Virus record (IMG/VR): IMGVR_UViG_3300049846_000628
Coordinates: 147,202 to 211,201 of that record
DNA: 64,000 bases
Direction: 5' to 3' (one strand)
This document shows positions 17,188 to 42,144 of the stretch, piece after piece. Position 1 is the first letter of the stretch, and each line of letters starts with the position of its first letter. The notes beneath the pieces are model-generated. The model made no database searches. It saw nothing but the letters and a program-made list of their open reading frames with translations, and was not told where the DNA came from. The position numbers and the translations under genes are program-made.

Positions 17188-17727
17188 CTATGCTTTATTT
17201 ATTATTCTTCCCAATTTATAATCTTTACCCGGACACTCTTTTGAAAACTTACATTCTACTCCATTATTCCACCATTTTTTGCCCCAAGAAGGATTCTTTT
17301 CCTTTGACATAATACCCACCATAACAGCACTCACACTCTCCCTCCATTTATCACTTGCCTTTCTTTTCTTTGCTGCTTTACTCAATGCTTTTCTATGTGC
17401 CTCACTTTTCTTTCTGCCTTTATGTGCCTCACTTAACTTCCTTTTAGTTTCCTCACTCAAAACCCTACCGGCACATCCTTCACCACCATCAGTCATATTT
17501 CTCAAAATACCTGTACCTAAATCTTTTCTACCAAGCACGGCAATCATATAAACCTCGTGCTTTCGTGCTTCTTCGTCTGTAAGGTTTTGCTTTAAGAATA
17601 TTCTTCTATCTTCTTCTGGGGGCAGATGTATTGCGTGCAGTTTATTGTTAATTCTACCTGCCTTTCCCTTACCAATGTAGTATGGAGTTCCATCTTCACG
17701 CAAGTAAGCGTAAGTATAATAATTCAT
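17188..17727 (-). mobile_element. free-standing GIY-YIG homing endonuclease with NUMOD3-like repeats
   Basis: YYTYAYLREDGTPYYIGKG motif; LSEETKRKLSEAHKG / KSEAHRKALS repeats. Confidence 0.85.
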
Positions 17728-18123: not shown

Positions 18124-18156
18124 AGGGATTTTCCCATATCTCTTATTTATTTTAAG

Positions 18157-18238
18157 TAGGGCGAGCGGGACTTGAACCCGCAAGGCTTGCGCCACCGGTT
18201 TTTAAGACCGGAATGTTTACCGATTTCATCACCGCCCC
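18157..18238 (-). tRNA. trnL: tRNA-Leu (anticodon TAA)
   Basis: Cloverleaf: GGGGCGG/TCGCCCT acceptor, CCGGT-CTTAAAA-ACCGG, long variable arm, GCGGG-TTCAAGT-CCCGC; no encoded CCA. Confidence 0.95.
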
Positions 18239-18251
18239 GTGATGTGAGACC

Positions 18252-18280
18252 ATTATAACTCTTTGAGTCTGAATGGTCAA
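18252..18280 (-). promoter_or_regulatory. sigma70 consensus promoter TTGACC-17-TATAAT for tRNA-Leu
   Basis: Consensus hexamers with 17-nt spacer between two tRNAs. Confidence 0.85.
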
Positions 18281-18281
18281 G

Positions 18282-18354
18282 TGCTCCTTGCGTGGATCGA
18301 ACACGCCTCAGGCGAATTATGAGTTCGCTGCATTCACCAGATTGCTAAAGGAGC
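18282..18354 (-). tRNA. tRNA with CAT anticodon (elongator Met or lysidine Ile2)
   Basis: GCTCCTT/AAGGAGC acceptor, GCGAA-CTCATAA-TTCGC, GCGTG-TTCGATC-CACGC, discriminator A; paired 1-72, so not initiator. Confidence 0.9.
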
Positions 18355-18358
18355 AAGG

Positions 18359-18446
18359 TACGAGTGCCTGGATTCGAACCAGGTCAAAGCCGCTAATCTG
18401 GCGGAAAGAGTTTATAAGACTCCTCTGACTACCAAGTCTCACTCGC
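18359..18446 (-). tRNA. atypical tRNA, anticodon TAT (nominal Ile), short D-arm, long variable arm
   Basis: GCGAGTG/CACTCGT acceptor, GAC-TTGGTA-GTC D-arm, GGAGT-CTTATAA-ACTCT, variable arm CCGC-CAGATTA-GCGG, CCTGG-TTCGAAT-CCAGG. Confidence 0.8.
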
Positions 18447-18884: not shown

Positions 18885-18913
18885 ATTATAGGGTAGATGG
18901 GTCCTGGCGTCAA
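18885..18913 (-). promoter_or_regulatory. sigma70 promoter TTGACG-17-TATAAT
   Basis: Consensus hexamers with 17-nt spacer. Confidence 0.8.
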
Positions 18914-22868: not shown

Positions 22869-24227
22869 TTATTTCTTAATACCAAATGTATCTCTAACTA
22901 GTTTTAAAGAAGTATATGAATTTTTAGCGTCAAAATGATGACACAACTCTTTAATCATATATAGACCACTTTGATCAATGTCATATTCTCTAGCAGGATC
23001 TCGTGTAATTTTAGGGAATAAACACTCTATAACATCACCTGCTCTCAAATTTGTATTTGATGGAATCATTACATTGAGGGTTTGAACAAATAGATTATTA
23101 TATCTCATTAGTGCTTGAGATTGGTACTCTAATGGATTTGCATTCTTTGCGGTTGAAATTCCTTTATCCATTGTCCCAACATCAAGAATTCCAGTCATAA
23201 TTCTAGAAGGAAGATCGCCAAGAGTTTGATCAGAATTTTGAGAAACTCTTGGTAATCTAATTTGTTCTTGTCCTAGGGTTTTTGTCTTATCTATGTAATT
23301 TTCTAGTCTGAAATGGGCTTTATCTGGTGGGGTAATAGTACCATCAAGTGGATTGAAGAATATTCTATAGTTAGAATAAGTTCCTAATCTTAATTTTTCA
23401 AGTAAATTTTGGTTTCTCTCAATATTATAGTTCAGAATTTTAAAGTTATTGTTAATTCTTGCGCCATCAGTAGTATAAGACTGTGTTGCTTCACTATAGA
23501 TATATGTTGCTTTTGGTGCCTGTTGATTTAACAAGTCAATAGATCTGAATTGAAATCCATCCACAGTTTGGTAGAAGAAGAATCCTGCAGTTCCTTCTTG
23601 TGAATTTACAGATGTGGAACCATCACTTGAAACTATAGGAACACTCTTAGATGCTAACCAAGTCAAAACTGTAAATGGTTTTCTCAGGTTACCAATAAAT
23701 CCATATTTGTTTGATGTTTTATCAATTGTCGTAGGTTTGTCTGTCTTTAGAACATTAGTAAGAATCCGACTTACAGATTCATTAATAGGCAATGAGGGAT
23801 CAAATTTTGTTGCAACTCTTGTGGTTTCATTTGAGATAGCATCTCTAGAAACAAGATTTAATGTAAAGCTTTCTTTATTGTTCTCCGCAATTACATCACT
23901 AATGCTAGAAACATACAAATAATTTTTAGGATCAGTTGAAAAATCTAATCCAGGGTTTTTATCTGTGTTACCTGCAATTTTGATCGCAATTCTTTCTCCA
24001 CCCCTCAAAGGTAAACCATTATATATTGATTGGAGTTTACCATCCTTACTGTCTGGAGAAGCAACAGTATTTCCTGTGTTTACAACTCTTATTTTAGCAG
24101 TAATTGTTGGAGAAAATACATCTTCATAATAATCAATCATAATTGAACCAGAAGTAATGTCTACTGCTCTACTTCCGTCGTTTGATTCTATAACTATCTG
24201 TTGAAATATAGACCTTTGAATAGACAT
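22869..24227 (-). CDS. baseplate hub protein (gp27-like)
   Basis: Position upstream of gp5; LRAGDVIECLFP...SGLYMIKELCHHF...LKLVRD C-terminus typical of hub proteins. Confidence 0.6.
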   Translation of the reverse strand: MSIQRSIFQQIVIESNDGSRAVDITSGSIMIDYYEDVFSPTITAKIRVVNTGNTVASPDSKDGKLQSIYNGLPLRGGERIAIKIAGNTDKNPGLDFSTDPKNYLYVSSISDVIAENNKESFTLNLVSRDAISNETTRVATKFDPSLPINESVSRILTNVLKTDKPTTIDKTSNKYGFIGNLRKPFTVLTWLASKSVPIVSSDGSTSVNSQEGTAGFFFYQTVDGFQFRSIDLLNQQAPKATYIYSEATQSYTTDGARINNNFKILNYNIERNQNLLEKLRLGTYSNYRIFFNPLDGTITPPDKAHFRLENYIDKTKTLGQEQIRLPRVSQNSDQTLGDLPSRIMTGILDVGTMDKGISTAKNANPLEYQSQALMRYNNLFVQTLNVMIPSNTNLRAGDVIECLFPKITRDPAREYDIDQSGLYMIKELCHHFDAKNSYTSLKLVRDTFGIKK

Positions 24228-26215
24228 TAGACGTAACTTAAATCGGAGAGTAATTTGTTTTTCATAAAGTTATTTACCAAGAAAGATTCGTCAGTTGAAA
24301 GGTCAAGATCAAGAGATCCACCAGATGCTGCTACAACTTGCTGAGTCGCTGGTTGTCTATCATCAATCACAATAACTTTTCTACCAGTTCTCTCTTGCTT
24401 TACGCCTTCAAGAACACCAGCTAAGTAAGATTGTCCCTCCATATCTACCTCAGCAGCAGTCTGTGTAGCAATACTTGCACCTGCTGGTCTCATTGAGACT
24501 AATGGTTGAGAGGGTTGTGCGAATCCTTTACCAATTGGTTTATTTGTGAGGAATAGAAGGCGAACGTATTGATCCAACTTAGCAGCATAATTAGGATCAT
24601 CATTGATAGCACCACCACCACGACTACCCTTTTTAGTATCATACTCTAAGTGAATATGTGGTCCAGTAACTCTTCCAGACTTTCCTACTCTTGCAAAAGA
24701 AGTTCCTGCTGGTATTTTTCCAGATTTGATGATTACCGAACTCAAGTGAGCCATTCTTAATTGAATGCCCAAACTTGGAACCCAAACATCTATCAATAAA
24801 CCATAATCACCGTATGTTCCTTGTGCTACAACCTCACAATCAACTCTCAAGGAAATATAAGTTCCAGTAGGTGCTGCAATATCAATTCCTCCGTGACCTC
24901 TACCATCTCCAACAAGACTCGATACCTCAATATAATCAACACCTCTACCTAGAGACTTTGTAAAGACATCACCCTCCCTCAATCTTCTTTGTCCTGCTGC
25001 TCCACCGGTGAGTAATGCAAGTAGTGCTGCTGCAGGCGATCCAAATTGAGATAAAACTTGAGCGGGGGATGGTGTTTGAGATGTTGGTGTAGCAGTTGAC
25101 TTTCCTAGAGGAGTATCCTTCGCCCTATACATTATTTCTATCTCTTTTCTAGAATATTTTGAATATTTCGTCCAAGCACTAGGACCTTGAGTTTTTAATA
25201 TTCCAATCGCCAATAGATCTTGATTATTTTGATCAAACATATCAGTATCTTTTAATCCAGCAGCAGATTGTGCTGAAGGTAAAGTACCTGGTACAATCTG
25301 ATATCTTCCAGCAGCCCATAAAGTTTTTTTAACATTTTGATAATTTTTAACTTCACCAATGGTCATATCAGTAAGATTTTTTCCAAGCCATTTTTTTGAT
25401 CCTCCTGGTCTATCACCAGACTGTCCATTATTGATTGCATTATAATCTCCTCCACTTTCTGGTCCAGAAATAATATCAAGAGCCTGTTTATGAATTGGTT
25501 TTAACTTACTACCAGATACTGAAGGTTGTGCAGATGGTGGAGTTCCAGGAATCCCAGGTATTGTTGATGGTAATTGACCAAAAGCATCAGGAATCTTTTC
25601 TAACTCTTTAAATGGTTGTATGAGAACAGCAAAAGCATCACTAATTCCTCCACCAAGCTCATCAATTGATAGTTTTAAATCATTCAGAGAACTTCTTACA
25701 AGATATGAACTATCAGAAAAATCAAACTTGGAAATATTAACCAATCCTGCACTAAAAACATTTCCAATGCTAGATATAACTTCAACCAGTTCATCTCCAT
25801 ATCCACTTAGAATACTTCCAGCCGCTACAATTCTTTGTGAAAATTGTTCTCCCAAGGAAATCCAAGTTGGTAGATTACTTAATATCCATCCAGCAGAAAG
25901 ATAACCAACAAATCCAAGTAATCTATCAGTAATACTTGTACTTCTATCAGATGCTGCTAATAGTCTTGGACCTTTTGGTTTAACAGCAATGAGTGGAGCT
26001 GCTAAACGATCTCTTAAAACATTTCTATTTTCTCTTTCAATTCTTTTTTGTTTTATACTTCTAATATTAGATGATAGATTTCTTTTAGTGGATATATTCT
26101 TATTCAGTAACTTTGATAGATTAATAGCTGTATTTTTAGTTTCCTTCGTCTGCCTTTTTGTGGAAGACACTGAATCAGAAATTTTTTTAAATGAGATAGA
26201 GGGAGATATAGCCAT
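24227..26215 (-). CDS. virion protein with lysozyme-like and M23 peptidase domains
   Basis: ESGGDYNAIN...AAGRYQIVPGTL...FDQNNQD (lysozyme-like); HGGIDIAA and TGPHIHLEY (M23 HxxxD/HxH). Confidence 0.8.
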   Translation of the reverse strand: MAISPSISFKKISDSVSSTKRQTKETKNTAINLSKLLNKNISTKRNLSSNIRSIKQKRIERENRNVLRDRLAAPLIAVKPKGPRLLAASDRSTSITDRLLGFVGYLSAGWILSNLPTWISLGEQFSQRIVAAGSILSGYGDELVEVISSIGNVFSAGLVNISKFDFSDSSYLVRSSLNDLKLSIDELGGGISDAFAVLIQPFKELEKIPDAFGQLPSTIPGIPGTPPSAQPSVSGSKLKPIHKQALDIISGPESGGDYNAINNGQSGDRPGGSKKWLGKNLTDMTIGEVKNYQNVKKTLWAAGRYQIVPGTLPSAQSAAGLKDTDMFDQNNQDLLAIGILKTQGPSAWTKYSKYSRKEIEIMYRAKDTPLGKSTATPTSQTPSPAQVLSQFGSPAAALLALLTGGAAGQRRLREGDVFTKSLGRGVDYIEVSSLVGDGRGHGGIDIAAPTGTYISLRVDCEVVAQGTYGDYGLLIDVWVPSLGIQLRMAHLSSVIIKSGKIPAGTSFARVGKSGRVTGPHIHLEYDTKKGSRGGGAINDDPNYAAKLDQYVRLLFLTNKPIGKGFAQPSQPLVSMRPAGASIATQTAAEVDMEGQSYLAGVLEGVKQERTGRKVIVIDDRQPATQQVVAASGGSLDLDLSTDESFLVNNFMKNKLLSDLSYV

Positions 26216-37859: not shown

Positions 37860-38092
37860 TTTTTTACTGTTGATCCTGGAGCTCTGCTGGCTTTTTCAAG
37901 GACAGTGTTCCAGGAAGGATGTTTGGAGGTGAGTTTATTCCTCCAATCACCCACTTCACCAACATTCATTTGTGTTGGAATAAGTGGTTTAAGGTGAGGA
38001 TTTTCTTTAAGATATGGTTCCTTTTCTGCCATAAGCATCCATTTTTCAAAGATTTCACCAGTTTCTGTATTTTCAAATCTATAGGTCGGCAT
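37853..38092 (-). CDS. conserved small protein with FmdB-like N-terminus (MPTYRFEN..TGE.FE)
   Basis: ORF track; usual neighbour of phoH in cyanomyoviruses. Confidence 0.75.
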   Translation of the reverse strand: MPTYRFENTETGEIFEKWMLMAEKEPYLKENPHLKPLIPTQMNVGEVGDWRNKLTSKHPSWNTVLEKASRAPGSTVKKL

Positions 38093-38118
38093 AAAGTTAC
38101 GAATTCAAGATAATTTAT

Positions 38119-38754
38119 TTAGATCCACTCTAGAGCTTCAGACACTGAGGGGAATTGCTCCTTAAAAACTTCTTTGCAAGCAAGTGCAATATCCATATGC
38201 TCTTTCTGAGTACCGTTTGCAGAACGCAGATTGATATAATGTATCCACGAACGGCAAGAACCGGTCATATAGATGCGTGTGGGCGTCGCCAAGGGCAATA
38301 CAAACCTTGAACACTCCTTTGCTACTCCGTGAGCAAGAAGTTCCTTGTAGAGGCGCATAGACTGTGCAAAATGCTCTTGAATTTTACTCTGCAAAGTCAG
38401 TTTCTCATACTCAGGAATATCATCAATTGAGTTCTGACGATTCTTAGTATCCTGACGACGAAGTTCTGGTACAGGAATGTATTCGGAAATCAGAGAAGTA
38501 TCAGCATACCGTTGCGAAAATTCTTGATATGTAAATGAACGGTGACGAAGGATTTGAGCTGCGATTCCACGATTTGTTTCAATCTCAAGAGTCATAGAAG
38601 ACTGTTCAAAAACAGACCAATGATTGTGATTAATACAATAAGCAAGCAACTTGGCATAGTTTTCGTTGTCTTGATTCGCAGGATTAGAAACTCGCGCAAT
38701 ATACGCCATTGTTTTTTCTGCATCGGGAGTCACCGAAATAAGTTTTACAGTCAT
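38119..38754 (-). CDS. thyX: FAD-dependent thymidylate synthase
   Basis: HWSVFEQ, QILRHRSFTYQEFSQRY (RHRx7S), SRFVLP, LRSANGTQKEH. Confidence 0.97.
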   Translation of the reverse strand: MTVKLISVTPDAEKTMAYIARVSNPANQDNENYAKLLAYCINHNHWSVFEQSSMTLEIETNRGIAAQILRHRSFTYQEFSQRYADTSLISEYIPVPELRRQDTKNRQNSIDDIPEYEKLTLQSKIQEHFAQSMRLYKELLAHGVAKECSRFVLPLATPTRIYMTGSCRSWIHYINLRSANGTQKEHMDIALACKEVFKEQFPSVSEALEWI

Positions 38755-38918
38755 TTCTTTCCAAATCCTTTTGATGTTTTTGCTTCGAGTTCTGCGAGTT
38801 CTTCTTTTAGTGCTCGCAGTTGTTGTTTCATTTCTAAAATTTTTTCATCTGTATAAAGATGCTCTTGCTTCACAAGGCGTTCAAGCAACTTTATAAGTTT
38901 CCGTGCTCTACTAGTCAT
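38751..38918 (-). CDS. small coiled-coil hypothetical protein (55 aa)
   Basis: Manual translation MTSRARKLIKLLERL...SKGFGKK. Confidence 0.65.
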   Translation of the reverse strand: MTSRARKLIKLLERLVKQEHLYTDEKILEMKQQLRALKEELAELEAKTSKGFGKK

Positions 38919-39084
38919 CTAAATCAGAGTCCTCAAAAATTTCGTCGTAATCTAAAATCGGTCTTTTTCTCACATCTGGTTCTGTGTATTTGTATGCAGA
39001 TGTATCAGAATAAACTTCTGCTTTCAGAGAATCAACCAATAATTCAAGATTACGGACAATCAGTTTTAGTTTGTCCTTGTCCAT
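38911..39084 (-). CDS. conserved small hypothetical protein (57 aa, MDKDKLKLIVRNLELLVDSLKAEVYSD...)
   Basis: Manual translation; promoter TTGATC-17-TAAAAT at 39106-39134. Confidence 0.7.
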   Translation of the reverse strand: MDKDKLKLIVRNLELLVDSLKAEVYSDTSAYKYTEPDVRKRPILDYDEIFEDSDLDD

Positions 39085-39195
39085 AAGATACCATTCTCTC
39101 TCAGGATTTTAGCATAAAAAAAGGAGGGGATCAACCCTATAATTATATAAGTTTTTTTGTAATATTTGTTACAATTTTATAAAATCTTAAGGGAC

Positions 39196-39223
39196 AAAAA
39201 AATTGCCGGGAATTTTTCCCAGC
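39196..39223 (-). terminator. intrinsic terminator GCTGGGA-AAAAT-TCCCGGC then U tract
   Basis: GC stem followed by AATTTTTTT just after the 39234 stop. Confidence 0.6.
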
Positions 39224-39233
39224 ATTTGGTAAA

Positions 39234-39602
39234 TCACTTTCGCTTTTTCTTTTCGGGTGACTTGTAACCCCACAGTTTTGGATTGACTCGCCCATATCCA
39301 AAGTCAATACTCTTCAGATTCCCACGAAACTTGTCCCAGTACATATCAAACAAACGAACTCTTGTTCCTCTTGTAAGATCAAAACAAATTTTATCATCCA
39401 CAGAATACTTGATGATATAAGCATCGTTGGGTGCATCTTTCGTACAGACTTCAGCATAAGAACTGTTTTCAATTAGAATATCACATCCGTAGCGTGACTT
39501 ACAGGTTTCTTTTTCTGCTGATGTCCAGTGGTCCATATGCTTTTCTATATTTTGTGGTGTTTGAGTTACATCACGAACTTGACTCACGAACGACCTCCCC
39601 AA
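39234..39602 (-). CDS. conserved cyanophage-type hypothetical protein
   Basis: ORF track; LFDMYWDKF...GYGRVNPKLWGY; start probably GTG near 39587. Confidence 0.7.
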   Translation of the reverse strand: MGRSFVSQVRDVTQTPQNIEKHMDHWTSAEKETCKSRYGCDILIENSSYAEVCTKDAPNDAYIIKYSVDDKICFDLTRGTRVRLFDMYWDKFRGNLKSIDFGYGRVNPKLWGYKSPEKKKRK

Positions 39603-40222
39603 TGAATATCTGGATAAGCTTCAGCAACGATCTCTTTTGTGATCTTATACTTATCACCAAGTTTTTTATCCTTTACAAGGCAAACAATTTCTGCTTCAAG
39701 AGGATGAAGCCCTTCAAGGATTGAAATGAACATTGATTCTCTACGAATATTATTCAGTCCATCATTACCACCTTTTACAAAGTGATAGAAGTTCTTGAAC
39801 TCTTTACGGATTGTTGTACGTCCCTGATTATCACTAGATCCAAGAGAGAAGGATCCAGTCTCGTGCATCTTACGGACTTCCTCAGTGATTTTAGTGCTTA
39901 AGGTTCCATTGTAGGAAGTTTGATCCGAGTATCCTGAGTAAGGAACTGGTCCTTCAGGAAGCATTGAAATTACAGTCTCATCAAAGTTCCAAATGAGAAC
40001 TGCTTTCAACGATGGATGCTCATACTTTTTAAGGATCTCCACCTTTTTAGCATTTGACCTTTGCCTTGATACAAGATCAAAAATCTCAAATGTAAAAGGA
40101 TTTGATGGGAGATTATCTACAACTGCTGGAGTTGTGGGTTTTTTTGTCTGAACTACCTTTGCTTTAGGCGTCGTCGTCTTCTTCTGTGTCGTAGTCATAA
40201 TAGTTTTCAAAATTAAATGCAA
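39584..40222 (-). CDS. conserved T4-like phage hypothetical protein
   Basis: LPEGPVPY...RESMFISILEGLHPLEAE motif. Confidence 0.75.
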   Translation of the reverse strand: MHLILKTIMTTTQKKTTTPKAKVVQTKKPTTPAVVDNLPSNPFTFEIFDLVSRQRSNAKKVEILKKYEHPSLKAVLIWNFDETVISMLPEGPVPYSGYSDQTSYNGTLSTKITEEVRKMHETGSFSLGSSDNQGRTTIRKEFKNFYHFVKGGNDGLNNIRRESMFISILEGLHPLEAEIVCLVKDKKLGDKYKITKEIVAEAYPDIHWGGRS

Positions 40223-40391
40223 TTACTTCGTCAGGTATAAGATTACCTTGTTGGTCGAACATCTCAGGATGAGGTCTAGGAATTTCCCGATAGTTCATCA
40301 TATATTCTCTTGCTACCCAACCAGTTACAAGTCCCACTATAAGAAACAAAACGGTTAAAAATGAACCGAAAACTAGGCTAACTGCGAGCAT
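40164..40391 (-). CDS. small membrane protein
   Basis: N-terminal hydrophobic helix; HPEMFDQQGNL. Confidence 0.65.
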   Translation of the reverse strand: MLAVSLVFGSFLTVLFLIVGLVTGWVAREYMMNYREIPRPHPEMFDQQGNLIPDEVIAFNFENYYDYDTEEDDDA

Positions 40392-40593
40392 TTTTCTTTC
40401 TCCGGGAAACTACTGTTTTTTTCTTTACATCTAAAGAAAATTCAAAATAGATGGTTACTTCCCGATGGAGAAAGCAAACCAATTTCTGAAAAATAATGTG
40501 GAAGTATTTGGGTTGCTTTCTTTTCCCTCCATTTAGAAAAATTTCAACACCACGATTCCTGTGGTTAAACTTATTTATGTTCGTATCAGACAA
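40378..40593 (-). CDS. hypothetical protein
   Basis: ORF track; NRGVEIFLNGG. Confidence 0.6.
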   Translation of the reverse strand: MSDTNINKFNHRNRGVEIFLNGGKRKQPKYFHIIFQKLVCFLHREVTIYFEFSLDVKKKTVVSRRKKNARS

Positions 40594-40822
40594 TTTGTTT
40601 TTCTTTCAGGAATTTTACAGTGTCCGTACACCCACCCAATTTTTGATTATCACAGATAACTTGAGGGAATGTAGTTCCTTCACCAAACTCAGCATAAAAT
40701 TCATCTTTGGTGAAGTGCTCATCAAGATTATACACTACAAAGTTGCTTCCCGTCAACTCTAATACTTGTTTGACCTTGTAACAATAAGGACAATTATCTT
40801 TTGAATATACAGTGAAATTCAT
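40586..40822 (-). CDS. nrdC: glutaredoxin
   Basis: YSKDNCPYC, TFPQV, GGCTD; ATG at 40822. Confidence 0.92.
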   Translation of the reverse strand: MNFTVYSKDNCPYCYKVKQVLELTGSNFVVYNLDEHFTKDEFYAEFGEGTTFPQVICDNQKLGGCTDTVKFLKEKQIV

Positions 40823-40862
40823 ATCTGAACAAGACAAAATAAGATTTAATATAATTTATAAG

Positions 40863-40963
40863 AAAAAAGAGGAGGTAAAATCCTCCTCTCATTATACCAC
40901 CAACTCACCTCTCCCACCACAGAGAGGGTCTTCATTCCCAAAGTTACAAGGATATTGAAGACT
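40863..40963 (-). ncRNA. candidate ~100-nt structured small RNA with own promoter and terminator
   Basis: Hairpins GTCTTCA/TGAAGAC and CCTCTCT/GGAGAGG, terminator GAGGAGG-ATTTTA-CCTCCTC-T6. Confidence 0.7.
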
Positions 40964-40968
40964 TGAAT

Positions 40969-40997
40969 ATTATAAGGTATTTTCACAAAAAAGTCAA
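40969..40997 (-). promoter_or_regulatory. sigma70 promoter TTGACT-17-TATAAT
   Basis: Near-consensus; drives the candidate sRNA. Confidence 0.85.
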
Positions 40998-41362
40998 GTG
41001 GTTTGTAAAGACTGAATATAGTCTTTGGAATTTTGAATATCTGCCTCAACAGCAGCAATTTGCTCTTCAAGACGAGTATATTCATCAGTCCCTTCTTCAA
41101 GACCAGAAAGTTCTTCTCTAAGAGTGGTTAAGTATTGTTCATTATTTGTAATTCTTTCTTGATGAGCTGCGATATCCCCTTCTACAGTATAAGGAGGTGG
41201 AACTGGATGAGTAATCGTTGCTTCAATTTCAAATTCTCCACCCTTCTCATCAATAAGAGCCTGGACTTCTTCTAGAGTATATCCAGTATCATTATTACCA
41301 TCAGCAGTCAAATAGTAAAGATGATTTAAAGGTAGAGTAAGCGTTGTCGTTTCAGTTGCCAT
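40994..41362 (-). CDS. acidic coiled-coil hypothetical protein
   Basis: MATETTTLTLPL...; ATAAATA late-like site upstream. Confidence 0.65.
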   Translation of the reverse strand: MATETTTLTLPLNHLYYLTADGNNDTGYTLEEVQALIDEKGGEFEIEATITHPVPPPYTVEGDIAAHQERITNNEQYLTTLREELSGLEEGTDEYTRLEEQIAAVEADIQNSKDYIQSLQTT

Positions 41363-41391
41363 AGTTTTATATTTTGTTTTTTTTTTATTTA

Positions 41392-42144
41392 TCAATATGT
41401 TAAGTGCCTAAGAGAGTTTTTATGCTCTTGTGCAATTAAAAATGGTTGAGATGCAACTTGTTGAAAAACTTCAAAGATATCATTTTGATTTGATTTCCAA
41501 TGAGTTCCACCGCCATCTTGTTTTTGCTTAAAACTTGTGCGGTCTTGATGTCTTTTCACCATCGTCTCAAAATCAAAACGATGAAGGTGTGCAATGTAAC
41601 AATCACGATGATAGTTATTGTTTTTACCTTTCAGTGAGTGAAATCCCCAGTTCCATTCAAGAGAAATTTTAGACATCAATGTTTTATCTTCAGCAGCATC
41701 TTTATACCAGATGTTTCTTTTTTCAAAAATAAAATCTCCAGTTTGAAGCGCAGGTTCATTTTGAATATCTTGAATTACACTATAACCACTGAAGGTTAGG
41801 TATAAGTCATCACCAGCAATAAACTCATCTATTGTTTGATTGAATGGTTTTTCAAGAGAGTATAAAATCTCATCACTCTCTGCAAAAATCACACACTCAT
41901 AATCTTTCAAAAGTTCTTTTTGAAAGTCTTGTGCAATTTTAACTAACCACTCATGGTCATTTACATAATCATTTGCAACAGTTCTTACATTGACTGGAAG
42001 ATTTGAAGTAGACCCATCTGTGGAATGATGGTCTAGAACATAAATGTCTTGATTATTAAAATACTGCTGATAATGCCTTAACCAAATCGGTAAAAAAATA
42101 CTTTCATTTTTTACTGTTGTAAATACGGCACACTTCTTTTTCAT
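41392..42144 (-). CDS. GT-A fold glycosyltransferase (GT2-like)
   Basis: FTTVKNESIFLPIWLRHY...YVLDHHSTDGS...FAESDEI. Confidence 0.75.
   Translation of the reverse strand: MKKKCAVFTTVKNESIFLPIWLRHYQQYFNNQDIYVLDHHSTDGSTSNLPVNVRTVANDYVNDHEWLVKIAQDFQKELLKDYECVIFAESDEILYSLEKPFNQTIDEFIAGDDLYLTFSGYSVIQDIQNEPALQTGDFIFEKRNIWYKDAAEDKTLMSKISLEWNWGFHSLKGKNNNYHRDCYIAHLHRFDFETMVKRHQDRTSFKQKQDGGGTHWKSNQNDIFEVFQQVASQPFLIAQEHKNSLRHLTY

What the first reader, a model, noticed from the sequence alone, without database searches (positions are those of the whole stretch)
40863..40997. Self-contained ~100-nt structured RNA gene with two UGGUG motifs
Seen: a near-consensus promoter, two hairpins, a single-stranded GAGTTGGTGGTATAAT linker and a strong terminator, with no credible ORF. 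TGGTG occurs in the loop of hairpin 2 and again in the linker. Known: cyanophage RNA motifs exist (the wcaG motif has UGGYG elements), but I cannot match this sequence to one from memory. Inference: an early sRNA acting as a protein sponge or antisense regulator; exposed GGAG/CCUCC tracts could target ribosome-binding sites.
Basis: partly seen in the sequence, partly recalled or inferred. Interest (0 to 1): 0.65.

Follow-up and report, generated by a model that had tools for sequence, protein, structure and literature searches.

The report
New cyanophage small RNA gene
A roughly 100-base structured RNA gene with its own strong promoter and terminator sits just upstream of the glutaredoxin gene in a group of freshwater cyanobacterial viruses; the RNA family is real, conserved and, as far as I could find, undescribed, but what it does is unknown.

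Summary
The order is: -35 TTGACT (40997-40992), 17 nt, -10 TATAAT (40974-40969), hairpin 1 (40962-40928), hairpin 2 (40927-40908, loop GUGGUG), a single-stranded linker UGAGUUGGUGGUAUAAU (40907-40891), and an intrinsic terminator (40890-40867 plus a U tract). It lies between a 133-aa ORF and nrdC (glutaredoxin).

The window is an uncultured relative of the freshwater Synechococcus myovirus S-SRM01. A covariance model finds 68 distinct homologues in S-SRM01 and IMG/VR contigs. In these, 98.6% of pair cells are paired, 13 of 25 pairs show compensatory changes, and 63 of 65 keep the promoter at a fixed distance. No ORF is conserved.

Rfam 15 has no match, including wcaG, manA and T-box. A pattern scan of 185,579 bacterial and archaeal genomes found no copy.

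The element is optional: 47 of 80 nrdC loci carry it. nrdC keeps its own TATAAAT box downstream of the terminator, and no antiterminator fold exists.

The best reading is a stand-alone early small RNA. Its conserved exposed parts are two UGGUG(G) boxes and the loop of hairpin 1, and these probably bind a partner in trans. The partner is unknown.

The parts
40992..40997 (-). -35 hexamer TTGACT of promoter P1; the TGA stop codon of the upstream 133-aa ORF (40994-41395) lies inside it
   Evidence: The hexamer is TTGACA, TTGACG or TTGACT in 63 of 65 homologues.
40969..40974 (-). -10 hexamer TATAAT of P1, 17 nt after the -35
   Evidence: The spacer is 17 nt in 63 of 63 parsed homologues, and there are always 6 nt between the -10 and the G of GUCUU.
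40928..40962 (-). Hairpin 1: outer stem GUCUUC/GAAGAC, internal loop, inner stem UCCU/GGGA, and a conserved 9-nt loop UGUAACUUU. The predicted 5' end of the RNA is at or next to 40962.
   Evidence: Fold. Covariation at pair 9/38 (CG 48, GC 10, UG 10) and pair 18/30 (CG 49, UA 16).
40908..40927 (-). Hairpin 2: stem CCUCUCU/GGAGAGG with the nearly invariant loop GUGGUG (40915-40920), the first UGGUG box
   Evidence: 4 of 6 pairs have changes on both sides. Loop conservation; unpaired probability about 0.9.
40891..40907 (-). Single-stranded linker UGAGUUGGUGGUAUAAU. The conserved core UGGUGGU (40896-40902) is the second UGGUG box. UGGUAUAAU (40891-40899) also reads as an extended -10 element.
   Evidence: GGTGGT is kept in 42 of 47 elements of the unbiased set, while TATAAT is lost in 15 of 47.
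40859..40890 (-). Intrinsic terminator: stem GAGAGGAGG/CCUCCUCU(U) at 40890-40867 with a 6-nt loop, then UUUUUUCUU
   Evidence: 7 of 9 pairs have compensatory changes across the family, in two sequence types (AGAGGAGAG/CUCUCCUCU and GGAGGGU/ACCCUCC).
40853..40860 (-). TATAAATT box directly after the terminator. It resembles the T4-type late promoter core TATAAAT and is probably nrdC's own promoter, not part of the RNA.
   Evidence: TATAAATTA is present in 63 of 65 homologues. It is also present in front of nrdC in relatives that lack the RNA element. The late-promoter core is quoted in PMC3037559.
40586..40822 (-). nrdC (glutaredoxin, 78 aa, MNFTVYSK...), the usual downstream neighbour. It is context, not part of the RNA.
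   Evidence: 62 of 65 full elements are followed by nrdC after 27-40 nt.

Best explanation
This is a stand-alone gene for a roughly 100-nt non-coding RNA of a clade of freshwater T4-like cyanophages (S-SRM01-like Kyanoviridae).

Proposed course of events: host RNA polymerase with its primary sigma factor starts at a near-consensus promoter immediately after infection. The transcript begins at the foot of hairpin 1, folds into two stacked hairpins and ends at a strong intrinsic terminator.

The RNA displays three conserved unpaired segments: the loop of hairpin 1 (UGURWCUUY), the loop of hairpin 2 (GUGGUG) and the linker core (UGGUGGU). I propose that it acts in trans through the two UGGUG(G) boxes. 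Either they base-pair with CACCA-containing RNA, or they hold a protein that binds G/U-rich RNA.

Shown: the promoter, structure and terminator anatomy; its conservation and covariation; the absence of coding potential; its independence from nrdC.

Inferred: that a discrete transcript exists, that it is made early, that it acts in trans, and the nature of the partner.
For: - Anatomy and fold.
- Family size: 68 distinct homologues found with covariance model R1, scoring 55-126 bits.
- Structure support: 98.6% of pair cells are paired. 13 of 25 pairs have changes on both sides. The covariation score is 0.386, against 0.201 +/- 0.007 in shuffles (0 of 500 reach it) and at most 0.167 when partners are slid. 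An independent MAFFT plus RNAalifold run gives the same helices.
- Strand: G-U pairs are frequent on this strand, and the minus strand folds 5 kcal/mol better than the plus strand.
- Promoter: TTGACN-17-TATAAT-like in 63 of 65, always 6 nt before hairpin 1.
- Other promoters: the other two exact consensus promoters in the window lie within and about 440 nt upstream of the tRNA cluster.
- No conserved ORF.
- Exposed motifs: the loop and linker motifs are nearly invariant and predicted to be unpaired. GGTGGT is kept even where the linker's TATAAT has decayed.
- Independence from nrdC:
  - 47 of 80 nrdC loci carry the element and about 32 do not, yet those keep the TATAAAT box in front of nrdC.
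  - The element persists when another gene follows it. This is a 212-aa gene in L022, L211 and L173 (truncated to 74 aa), a 76-aa gene in L175 and L180, and a 325-aa gene in L013.
  - Upstream genes differ in more than 25 ways.
- No alternative antiterminator fold: the mean gain is -0.6 kcal/mol and the window's gain is 0.0.
Against: - There are no expression data, so a discrete transcript is inferred only.
- No partner or target was found. The only notable complementarity inside the window (-32.4 kcal/mol, upstream of the M23-peptidase gene at 24227-26215) is matched by 1 of 30 shuffled probes, and that region has no DNA-level match in any isolate phage genome, S-SRM01 included.
- The element is almost always 27-40 nt upstream of nrdC and in the same orientation. 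That also fits a cis role.
- Terminators leak, so P1 may contribute early nrdC transcription.
- The first 66 homologues were fetched with patterns that required the linker and loop motifs. Only the nrdC-anchored set is unbiased.
- A6 was aligned to the model's own structure, which leans pair counts towards that structure.
Confidence: 0.6

Rival explanations
1. It is a cis-acting leader. P1 is an early promoter for nrdC and the genes after it. The two hairpins and the UGGUG boxes would be a control element that decides whether polymerase stops at the terminator. The control could be factor-dependent or RNA-mediated processive antitermination, in the manner of lambda PR'-tR' or HK022 put (both from my own knowledge), or a riboswitch.
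For: The order is promoter, structured RNA, terminator, gene. 62 of 65 full elements are followed by nrdC within 27-40 nt on the same strand. The two hairpins abut with no spacer, as in put RNA (my own knowledge). A -10-like element sits just before the terminator.
Against: No mutually exclusive antiterminator helix exists. When the terminator's 3' arm is blocked, the consensus fold leaves the 5' arm unpaired. The mean per-sequence gain is -0.6 kcal/mol and exceeds 2 kcal/mol in only 7 of 68. There is no covariation between hairpin 2 and the terminator arms. nrdC has its own TATAAAT box downstream of the terminator and keeps it in the roughly 32 relatives that lack the element. The downstream gene can differ. 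No Rfam riboswitch matches. Factor-dependent processive antitermination is not excluded.
Confidence: 0.17
2. It is mainly a DNA-level regulatory and recombination cassette at the edge of a hyperplastic region. It would be comparable to the PeSL promoter-plus-stem-loop cassettes of T4-type phages. A second, nested promoter (the extended -10 TGGTATAAT in the linker) would start inside the terminator's 5' arm and so escape termination to express nrdC.
For: Upstream genes are hypervariable, and their stop codon often lies inside the -35 hexamer. L202 shows a promoter remnant fused directly to the TATAAAT box with the RNA removed. L029 carries a second, partial copy (P1, hairpin 1 and half of hairpin 2) elsewhere on the contig. 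TGGTATAAT is a perfect extended -10, and a start 7 nt downstream of it falls at about 40884, inside the stem arm 40890-40882. PeSLs are described in PMC2839356 and PMC4122927.
Against: PeSLs occur about 50 times per genome (PMC2839356). This element occurs once in 64 kb even with all search filters off. Compensatory changes in four helices and frequent G-U pairs point to selection on a folded RNA, not on DNA identity. The linker's TATAAT is lost in 15 of 47 unbiased members (GGTTAAT, GGTTACT, GGTTAGT, GGTCAAT, GGTTCATA), and all 15 keep GGTGGT. A nested promoter therefore cannot be the conserved function, although it may operate in some members, including this window.
Confidence: 0.13
3. Hairpin 1 mimics a CRISPR repeat (an RNA anti-CRISPR or solitary repeat unit). 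It is 35 nt, has GUCUUC...GAAGAC ends and a small internal GGG/CCC-type stem. As I recall them, cyanobacterial repeats end in ...GGGAYUGAAAC.
For: The support is a resemblance recalled from memory only. The element has its own promoter, as described for phage RNA anti-CRISPRs (my own knowledge).
Against: A scan of 241 million metagenome records for two hairpin-1-like units at spacer distance gave 89 loci, all consistent with chance, and no array (best unit-to-unit identity 18 of 35). The outer stem covaries (CG with GC), which is not expected of a conserved crRNA handle. The idea explains neither hairpin 2 nor the linker. The test was narrow, because it required near-identity to hairpin 1.
Confidence: 0.03

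Closest known systems
Phage-encoded trans-acting small RNAs with their own promoter and terminator (for example lambda OOP and P22 sar; cyanophage S-PM2 CfrI; the functionally unassigned stable RNAs C and D of T4, from my own knowledge)
   Same: A short non-coding transcript made from a host-type promoter and ended by an intrinsic terminator, encoded in a lytic phage genome. Like T4 RNAs C and D, it has no assigned function.
   Different: There is no sequence or Rfam relationship. It is not antisense to a neighbouring gene, because all local genes are on the same strand. Its conserved parts are two UGGUG boxes rather than a long complementary stretch.
Csr/Rsm-type sponge RNAs (CsrB, RsmZ): a short motif repeated in hairpin loops and in linkers (my own knowledge)
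   Same: The same short motif is displayed once in a hairpin loop and once in the adjoining single-stranded linker, followed by a terminator. The motif is more conserved than the stems.
   Different: The motif is UGGUG(G), not GGA. There are only two copies. As far as I know, cyanobacteria have no CsrA. No binding protein is known or predicted here.
PeSL cassettes (promoter-early stem-loop) of T4-type phages (PMC2839356, PMC4122927)
   Same: A consensus sigma-70 promoter combined with a terminator stem-loop within about 140 bp, at the border of a region where genes are swapped. There are degraded or partial copies (L029, L202).
   Different: It is single-copy, not about 50 per genome. About 95 nt of covarying structured RNA with conserved loops lie between the promoter and the terminator. 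In PeSLs the stem-loop lies within or next to the promoter.
Cyanophage-associated Rfam motifs wcaG (RF01761), manA (RF01745), glnA/glutamine riboswitch (RF01739) and PhotoRC-II (RF01717) (PMC2864571)
   Same: A conserved structured RNA in T4-like cyanophage intergenic regions. manA is reported upstream of nucleotide-synthesis genes.
   Different: None of these models matches the element even at E <= 10 with permissive filters, nor in six relatives at E <= 1. Those motifs are 5'-UTR elements without a promoter-terminator pair of their own.
Promoter-proximal terminated transcripts used for antitermination control (lambda PR'-tR' '6S' transcript; HK022 put RNA; my own knowledge)
   Same: A strong promoter, a short structured transcript and an intrinsic terminator upstream of a gene block. 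The two hairpins are directly adjacent, as in put.
   Different: No Q-like or N-like factor, or any other antitermination factor, was identified. The downstream gene has its own promoter-like box. The element is dispensable in about 40% of close relatives.
T-box discriminator (UGGN pairs with the tRNA 3' NCCA end; T-box core ...GGUGGUA...; my own knowledge)
   Same: UGGUGG is the exact complement of CCACCA, and GGUGGUA is shared with the T-box core as I recall it.
   Different: The Rfam T-box model does not match. There is no Stem I or specifier loop, and no antiterminator bulge. As far as I know, T-boxes are not reported in cyanobacteria or their phages.

Membership tests
Any Rfam 15 family (4227 covariance models) | Score at or above the family's gathering threshold | tested here: not met
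   In the whole window at gathering thresholds, only two tRNAs match. In 40700-41100 at E <= 10, only chance matches appear (SNORD25 18 bits, SraG 16 bits, ST7-OT3 17 bits), all far below their thresholds. Six relatives at E <= 1 give nothing at the element.
wcaG RNA motif (RF01761) | Match to the wcaG covariance model | tested here: not met
   No wcaG hit, even at E <= 10 with permissive filters.
manA RNA motif (RF01745) | Match to the manA covariance model; located in the 5' UTR of the regulated gene | tested here: not met
   No hit. The element also has its own terminator before the gene.
T-box leader (RF00230) | Stem I with specifier loop, plus an antiterminator whose bulge carries UGGN and which competes with the terminator | tested here: not met
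   No Rfam hit. No alternative helix involves the terminator's 5' arm.
Transcription-attenuating riboswitch or leader | Mutually exclusive terminator and antiterminator structures | tested here: not met
   The consensus fold with the terminator's 3' arm blocked shows no pairing of the 5' arm. The mean gain is -0.6 kcal/mol and the window's gain is 0.0.
Transcription-attenuating riboswitch or leader | The regulated gene depends on the leader's promoter | tested here: not met
   A TATAAAT box lies between the terminator and nrdC in 63 of 65 members. The same box precedes nrdC in relatives without the element.
PeSL cassette | Many dispersed copies per genome (about 50) flanking ORFans | tested here: not met
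   There is one copy in the 64 kb window with filters off; the next best score is 13.7 bits. Only L029 shows an extra partial copy among 100 sources.
PeSL cassette | Consensus sigma-70 promoter plus a stem-loop terminator, at sites of gene insertion or deletion | tested here: met
   see also L202.
Stand-alone bacterial or phage sRNA gene | Own promoter, intrinsic terminator, no conserved ORF, and conserved structure with covariation | tested here: met
Stand-alone bacterial or phage sRNA gene | A discrete transcript detected in cells | not testable with these tools
   No transcriptome data for S-SRM01 or its relatives were available. The S-SRM01 genome paper does not mention promoters or sRNAs.
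RNA anti-CRISPR / solitary repeat unit | Similarity to the repeat of a CRISPR array in hosts | tested here: inconclusive
   No array of hairpin-1-like repeats was found in the metagenome collection. The pattern required near-identity, and no host genome could be searched.

The most novel reading that the evidence does not exclude
The two UGGUGG boxes are exact complements of CCACCA, the 3' end of tRNAs that begin with GG and carry discriminator A (my own knowledge). The RNA could therefore be a trans-acting tRNA 3'-end binder, using the same UGGN-NCCA pairing as T-box leaders and RNase P RNA. A phage could use it early in infection to sense, sequester or shield uncharged tRNA acceptor ends, for example against host toxins that attack CCA ends. 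Nothing here tests this idea. It rests only on the motif and on its exposure in duplicate.
Probability: 0.05. Interest if true: 0.85.

Novelty: new member of a known kind. Interest (0 to 1): 0.5.

Why it matters
Very few small RNAs of cyanophages are known. Those mentioned in the papers read here are the antisense RNA CfrI and a handful of cis-regulatory motifs (PMC12197685, PMC2864571).

This is a well-supported new family. It has 68 distinct sequences, a clear structure, its own consensus promoter and terminator, and sharply conserved exposed motifs. One member lies in a cultured phage-host pair (S-SRM01 and Synechococcus KCZYC6), so it can be tested directly.

Because it is probably transcribed by unmodified host polymerase, it is a candidate early host-takeover factor. 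It would give a first handle on RNA-based regulation in freshwater picocyanobacterial infections.

It also marks the fixed border of a gene-swapping region, which may be useful for understanding how these genomes shuffle accessory genes.

Tried and rejected
1. Rfam at gathering and permissive thresholds on the window, the locus and six relatives: no family.

2. Literature searches: by keyword, for S-SRM01, in the 10,000-viral-RNA catalogue, and for the motif string itself. No description was found. The supplements of PMC10690425 are not held, so an unnamed entry in that catalogue cannot be excluded.

3. Host origin: a pattern scan of 185,579 species genomes gave 7 hits in gut and other MAGs, none cyanobacterial. 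The highest model score at a pattern-match position was 16.9 bits (L126); the overall top hit across the seven loci, 20.1 bits in L127, lies away from the pattern match. All are chance.

4. Coding potential: rejected.

5. Linker as a conserved extended -10 promoter: rejected as the family's conserved function, because TATAAT is lost in 15 of 47 unbiased members. It is not excluded for this window.

6. Antiterminator or riboswitch switch: no alternative fold.

7. Pseudoknots between loops and linker: mutual information shows only the four helices. The motifs are too invariant to covary.

8. Targets within the phage:
   - The strong duplexes are on the plus strand, opposite Gly-codon runs of minus-strand genes, so they are unlikely to be transcribed.
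   - A look-alike at 17270-17340 lies inside a 179-aa ORF.
   - The best hit at a translation-initiation region (the M23-peptidase gene) is not significant, and the region has no DNA-level match in any isolate phage genome.

9. CRISPR-repeat mimicry of hairpin 1: no arrays found.

10. Presence next to nrdC in marine and estuarine isolates (S-T4, S-SKS1, AG-345-L05, S-CREM1, P-SSM2, S-PM2): absent, best score 13.5 bits.

Full report
**What is there.** All local genes lie on the minus strand, and so does the feature. It occupies the gap between a 133-aa ORF (40994-41395) and nrdC, a glutaredoxin whose ATG is at 40822.

Reading the minus strand, the order is:
- -35 TTGACT (40997-40992), a 17-nt spacer, then -10 TATAAT (40974-40969);
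- six bases, then hairpin 1 (40962-40928), which has an outer and an inner stem separated by an internal loop;
- with no spacer, hairpin 2 (40927-40908), whose 6-nt loop is GUGGUG;
- an unpaired linker UGAGUUGGUGGUAUAAU (40907-40891);
- a terminator with a 9-bp stem (40890-40867) and the tail UUUUUUCUU.

The promoter matches 11 of 12 consensus positions. It ties for the top score among promoter-like sites in a 10 kb scan, and the terminator is the top terminator-like site. The 103-nt RNA folds at -37.3 kcal/mol, z = -3.4. The strand and the exact limits are the only refinements.

**What the window is.** The nearest isolate is the freshwater Synechococcus myovirus S-SRM01 (Kyanoviridae, Serangoonvirus), with about 77-80% DNA identity in conserved stretches. 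The locus is base-for-base identical to part of IMG/VR contig 3300049846_000628, which is 211 kb long.

**A family, not a one-off.** S-SRM01 has the same element in an unannotated 228-bp gap before its glutaredoxin gene. Two pattern scans of IMG/VR, plus an nrdC-anchored fetch, supplied more loci. A covariance model built from the first 20 sequences then found 68 distinct full-length members scoring 55-126 bits. Their pairwise identity ranges from 55% to 99%.

The structure is well supported on this set:
- 98.6% of pair cells form standard pairs.
- 13 of 25 pairs show changes on both sides.
- The covariation score is 0.386. Column shuffles give 0.201 +/- 0.007 (0 of 500 reach the observed value), and slid partners give at most 0.167.
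- The terminator exists in two sequence versions, AGAGGAGAG/CUCUCCUCU and GGAGGGU/ACCCUCC, so it is conserved as a structure.

An independent MAFFT plus RNAalifold analysis found the same helices. G-U pairs are frequent on this strand. The minus strand folds 5 kcal/mol better than its complement. Together with the promoter and the U tract, this fixes the transcribed strand.

**Promoter and ends.** In 63 of 65 members with enough upstream sequence, the promoter reads TTGAC(A/G/T)-17 nt-TATAAT (or a one-base variant). It is always 6 nt before the G of GUCUU. The RNA should therefore begin at the foot of hairpin 1 and be about 101 nt long.

The window has only three exact TTGAC-N18-TATAAT sites. 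One of the other two lies between two tRNA genes and the other is about 440 nt upstream of the tRNA cluster. Sigma-70-type promoters are taken as early promoters in T4-like cyanophages (PMC3037559). Early expression here is an inference from that.

**Not coding.** The longest ORF inside the element varies from 12 to 34 codons, with different starts and frames. The AUG within AUGAAGAC is present in only 38 of 68 members.

**What is conserved.** Apart from the stems, the nearly invariant positions are the hairpin 1 loop (UGURWCUUY), the hairpin 2 loop (GUGGUG) and the linker core UGGUGGU. All are predicted to be unpaired across the family.

The first two fetches required these motifs, so the fair test is the nrdC-anchored set. 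There, GGTGGT is kept in 42 of 47 elements. The TATAAT that follows it is lost in 15 of 47 (GGTTAAT, GGTTACT, GGTTAGT, GGTCAAT, GGTTCATA), and all 15 keep GGTGGT. This matters because UGGUAUAAU is also a perfect extended -10 element, and a start 7 nt downstream of it would fall inside the terminator's 5' arm. Such a nested promoter may work in this window, but it cannot be what the family conserves.

**Relation to nrdC.** 62 of 65 full elements are followed by nrdC after 27-40 nt. This looks cis-regulatory, but four observations argue against that.
1. A TATAAATTA box lies between the terminator and the gene in 63 of 65 members. It resembles the T4-type late promoter core TATAAAT (PMC3037559).
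2. Of the 80 closest nrdC loci, 47 carry the element and about 32 do not. The loci without it mostly keep a similar TATAAAT-type box in front of nrdC.
3. The element persists when another gene follows it: a 212-aa gene in L022, L211 and L173 (truncated to 74 aa), a 76-aa gene in L175 and L180, and a 325-aa gene with no nrdC in L013.
4. There is no antiterminator. With the terminator's 3' arm blocked, the consensus fold leaves the 5' arm free. The mean energy gain from pairing it upstream is -0.6 kcal/mol, and it is 0.0 for the window.

The element is absent next to nrdC in six marine or estuarine isolates and is single-copy in the window.

**Where it sits in the genome.** The genes upstream of the element differ in more than 25 ways among the homologues. 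Their stop codon often lies inside the -35 hexamer (the TGA of TTGACA), as it does in the window. The element therefore marks the fixed edge of a gene-swapping region.

This recalls the PeSL promoter-plus-stem-loop cassettes of T4-type phages (PMC2839356, PMC4122927). PeSLs, however, occur about 50 times per genome and have no covarying transcribed structure. A partial second copy (promoter, hairpin 1 and half of hairpin 2) in L029, and a remnant in L202, fit occasional recombination at the element.

**Known families.** No Rfam 15 family matches at any threshold tried. wcaG, manA, T-box and 6S are specifically absent. A scan of one genome for each of 185,579 bacterial and archaeal species, using a pattern that every pattern-fetched member (alignment A4) satisfies, gave seven loci, none cyanobacterial. 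The model scored at most 16.9 bits at a pattern-match position and at most 20.1 bits anywhere in those loci. There is no sign of a host-encoded original. Literature searches found no description. The large viral RNA catalogue of PMC10690425 could not be checked, because its supplements are not held.

**How it most likely works.** The shown facts fit a stand-alone small RNA: transcribed by host polymerase, protected by a 5'-terminal hairpin and a 3' terminator, and presenting the same short motif twice, once in a loop and once in the neighbouring linker. This layout is typical of RNAs that bind a partner through repeated exposed motifs, either a protein (as in Csr/Rsm sponges, from my own knowledge) or complementary RNA.

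I could not identify the partner. Within the window, the strong complementarities are on the plus strand, opposite Gly-codon runs of minus-strand genes, so they are unlikely to be transcribed. The best site at a translation start (the M23-peptidase gene at 24227-26215, -32.4 kcal/mol) is equalled by 1 of 30 shuffled probes, and that region has no DNA-level match in any isolate phage genome, S-SRM01 included.

UGGUGG is the exact complement of the tRNA end CCACCA. That gives a speculative but testable reading, which I rate at about 5%.

**Rivals and my estimates.**
- Stand-alone trans-acting sRNA: about 0.6.
- Cis-acting control of early read-through into nrdC, for example processive antitermination: about 0.17.
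- A mainly DNA-level promoter/terminator/recombination cassette with a nested promoter: about 0.13.
- CRISPR-repeat mimic: about 0.03. No matching arrays were found.
- The remaining probability, about 0.07, is left unassigned.

**Verdict.** It is a new family of a known kind, a phage-encoded small RNA, in a cultivable phage-host system. Interest is moderate (0.5). It is solid and testable, but not surprising in kind, and its function is still open.

Noticed in passing
window 18156-18446 (-), 18252-18280 (-), 18885-18913 (-): A cluster of three tRNA genes: Leu-taa, Met-cat and Ile-tat. The third is found by ARAGORN only, not by Rfam at the gathering threshold. The window's only other exact consensus promoters (TTGAC-N18-TATAAT) lie here, one between tRNA-Met and tRNA-Leu and one about 440 nt upstream of the cluster.
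   Followed up: partly
L029:12584-12720 (-): A second, partial copy of the element on one IMG/VR contig. It has a consensus promoter, an intact hairpin 1 and the 5' half of hairpin 2, then breaks at GTGGTGG into a Gly-codon-rich stretch with no evident start codon. It looks like a recombination remnant at the GGTGG microhomology.
   Followed up: partly
L202 (upstream of nrdC, shown): The sequence TTGACAGTCGTGCTATAATGTATAAATTATT reads as a -35, a 7-nt gap and a TATAAT fused directly to the TATAAAT box. This looks like a clean deletion of the RNA body in a relative that keeps the flanks.
   Followed up: no
window 40994-40997 and homologous loci: The stop codon of the upstream gene lies inside the -35 hexamer (the TGA of TTGACN) in the window and in many homologues, even though the upstream genes are unrelated (more than 25 different C-termini). 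The element is the fixed border of a hypervariable gene region.
   Followed up: partly
L003:3320-3369 and L001:4454-4505 (S-SRM01); window 38000-40900: A glutamine riboswitch (RF01739) lies about 1.9 kb downstream of the element in two relatives. It scores 38.3 bits in L003, above the gathering threshold, and 28.9 bits in S-SRM01, below it. The corresponding stretch of the window has none at E <= 1.
   Followed up: partly
window 39085-39233 (-): An intergenic stretch after a terminator (39224-39204) contains a promoter-like site: TTGATC-17 nt-TAAAAT, preceded by TG (39134-39106). In S-SRM01 the syntenic gap holds the glutamine riboswitch.
   Followed up: no
window 40853-40860 (-) and relatives: A TATAAATTA box directly upstream of nrdC is conserved whether or not the RNA element is present. 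It is probably a T4-late-type promoter for nrdC. TATAAATW is not enriched in the window as a whole (18 sites against 12 expected).
   Followed up: partly
window 17188-17727 (-): A 179-aa ORF with repeated SEAHK/KKxSEAH-like basic motifs, possibly a NUMOD-type homing-endonuclease module (my reading; not searched). It contains a chance look-alike of the hairpin 2/linker sequence at about 17270-17340.
   Followed up: no
window 24227-26215 (-): A 662-aa protein with a Peptidase_M23 domain (E = 2.9e-11). The 18 nt at -35 to -18 before its start codon are complementary to the sRNA linker, but not significantly so, and the region has no DNA-level match in any isolate phage genome, S-SRM01 included.
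   Followed up: yes
window 39584-40222 (-): The 212-aa ORF two genes downstream of nrdC matches Pfam DUF6433 (E = 3.5e-40). Its synteny with nrdC is kept in relatives.
   Followed up: no
L022:967-1605, L211:846-1484, L173:1136-1360: A 212-aa gene (MSIVASKSQRRLI...), truncated to 74 aa in L173, is inserted between the RNA element and nrdC in some relatives. It may be a mobile endonuclease-type insertion; it was not searched.
   Followed up: no
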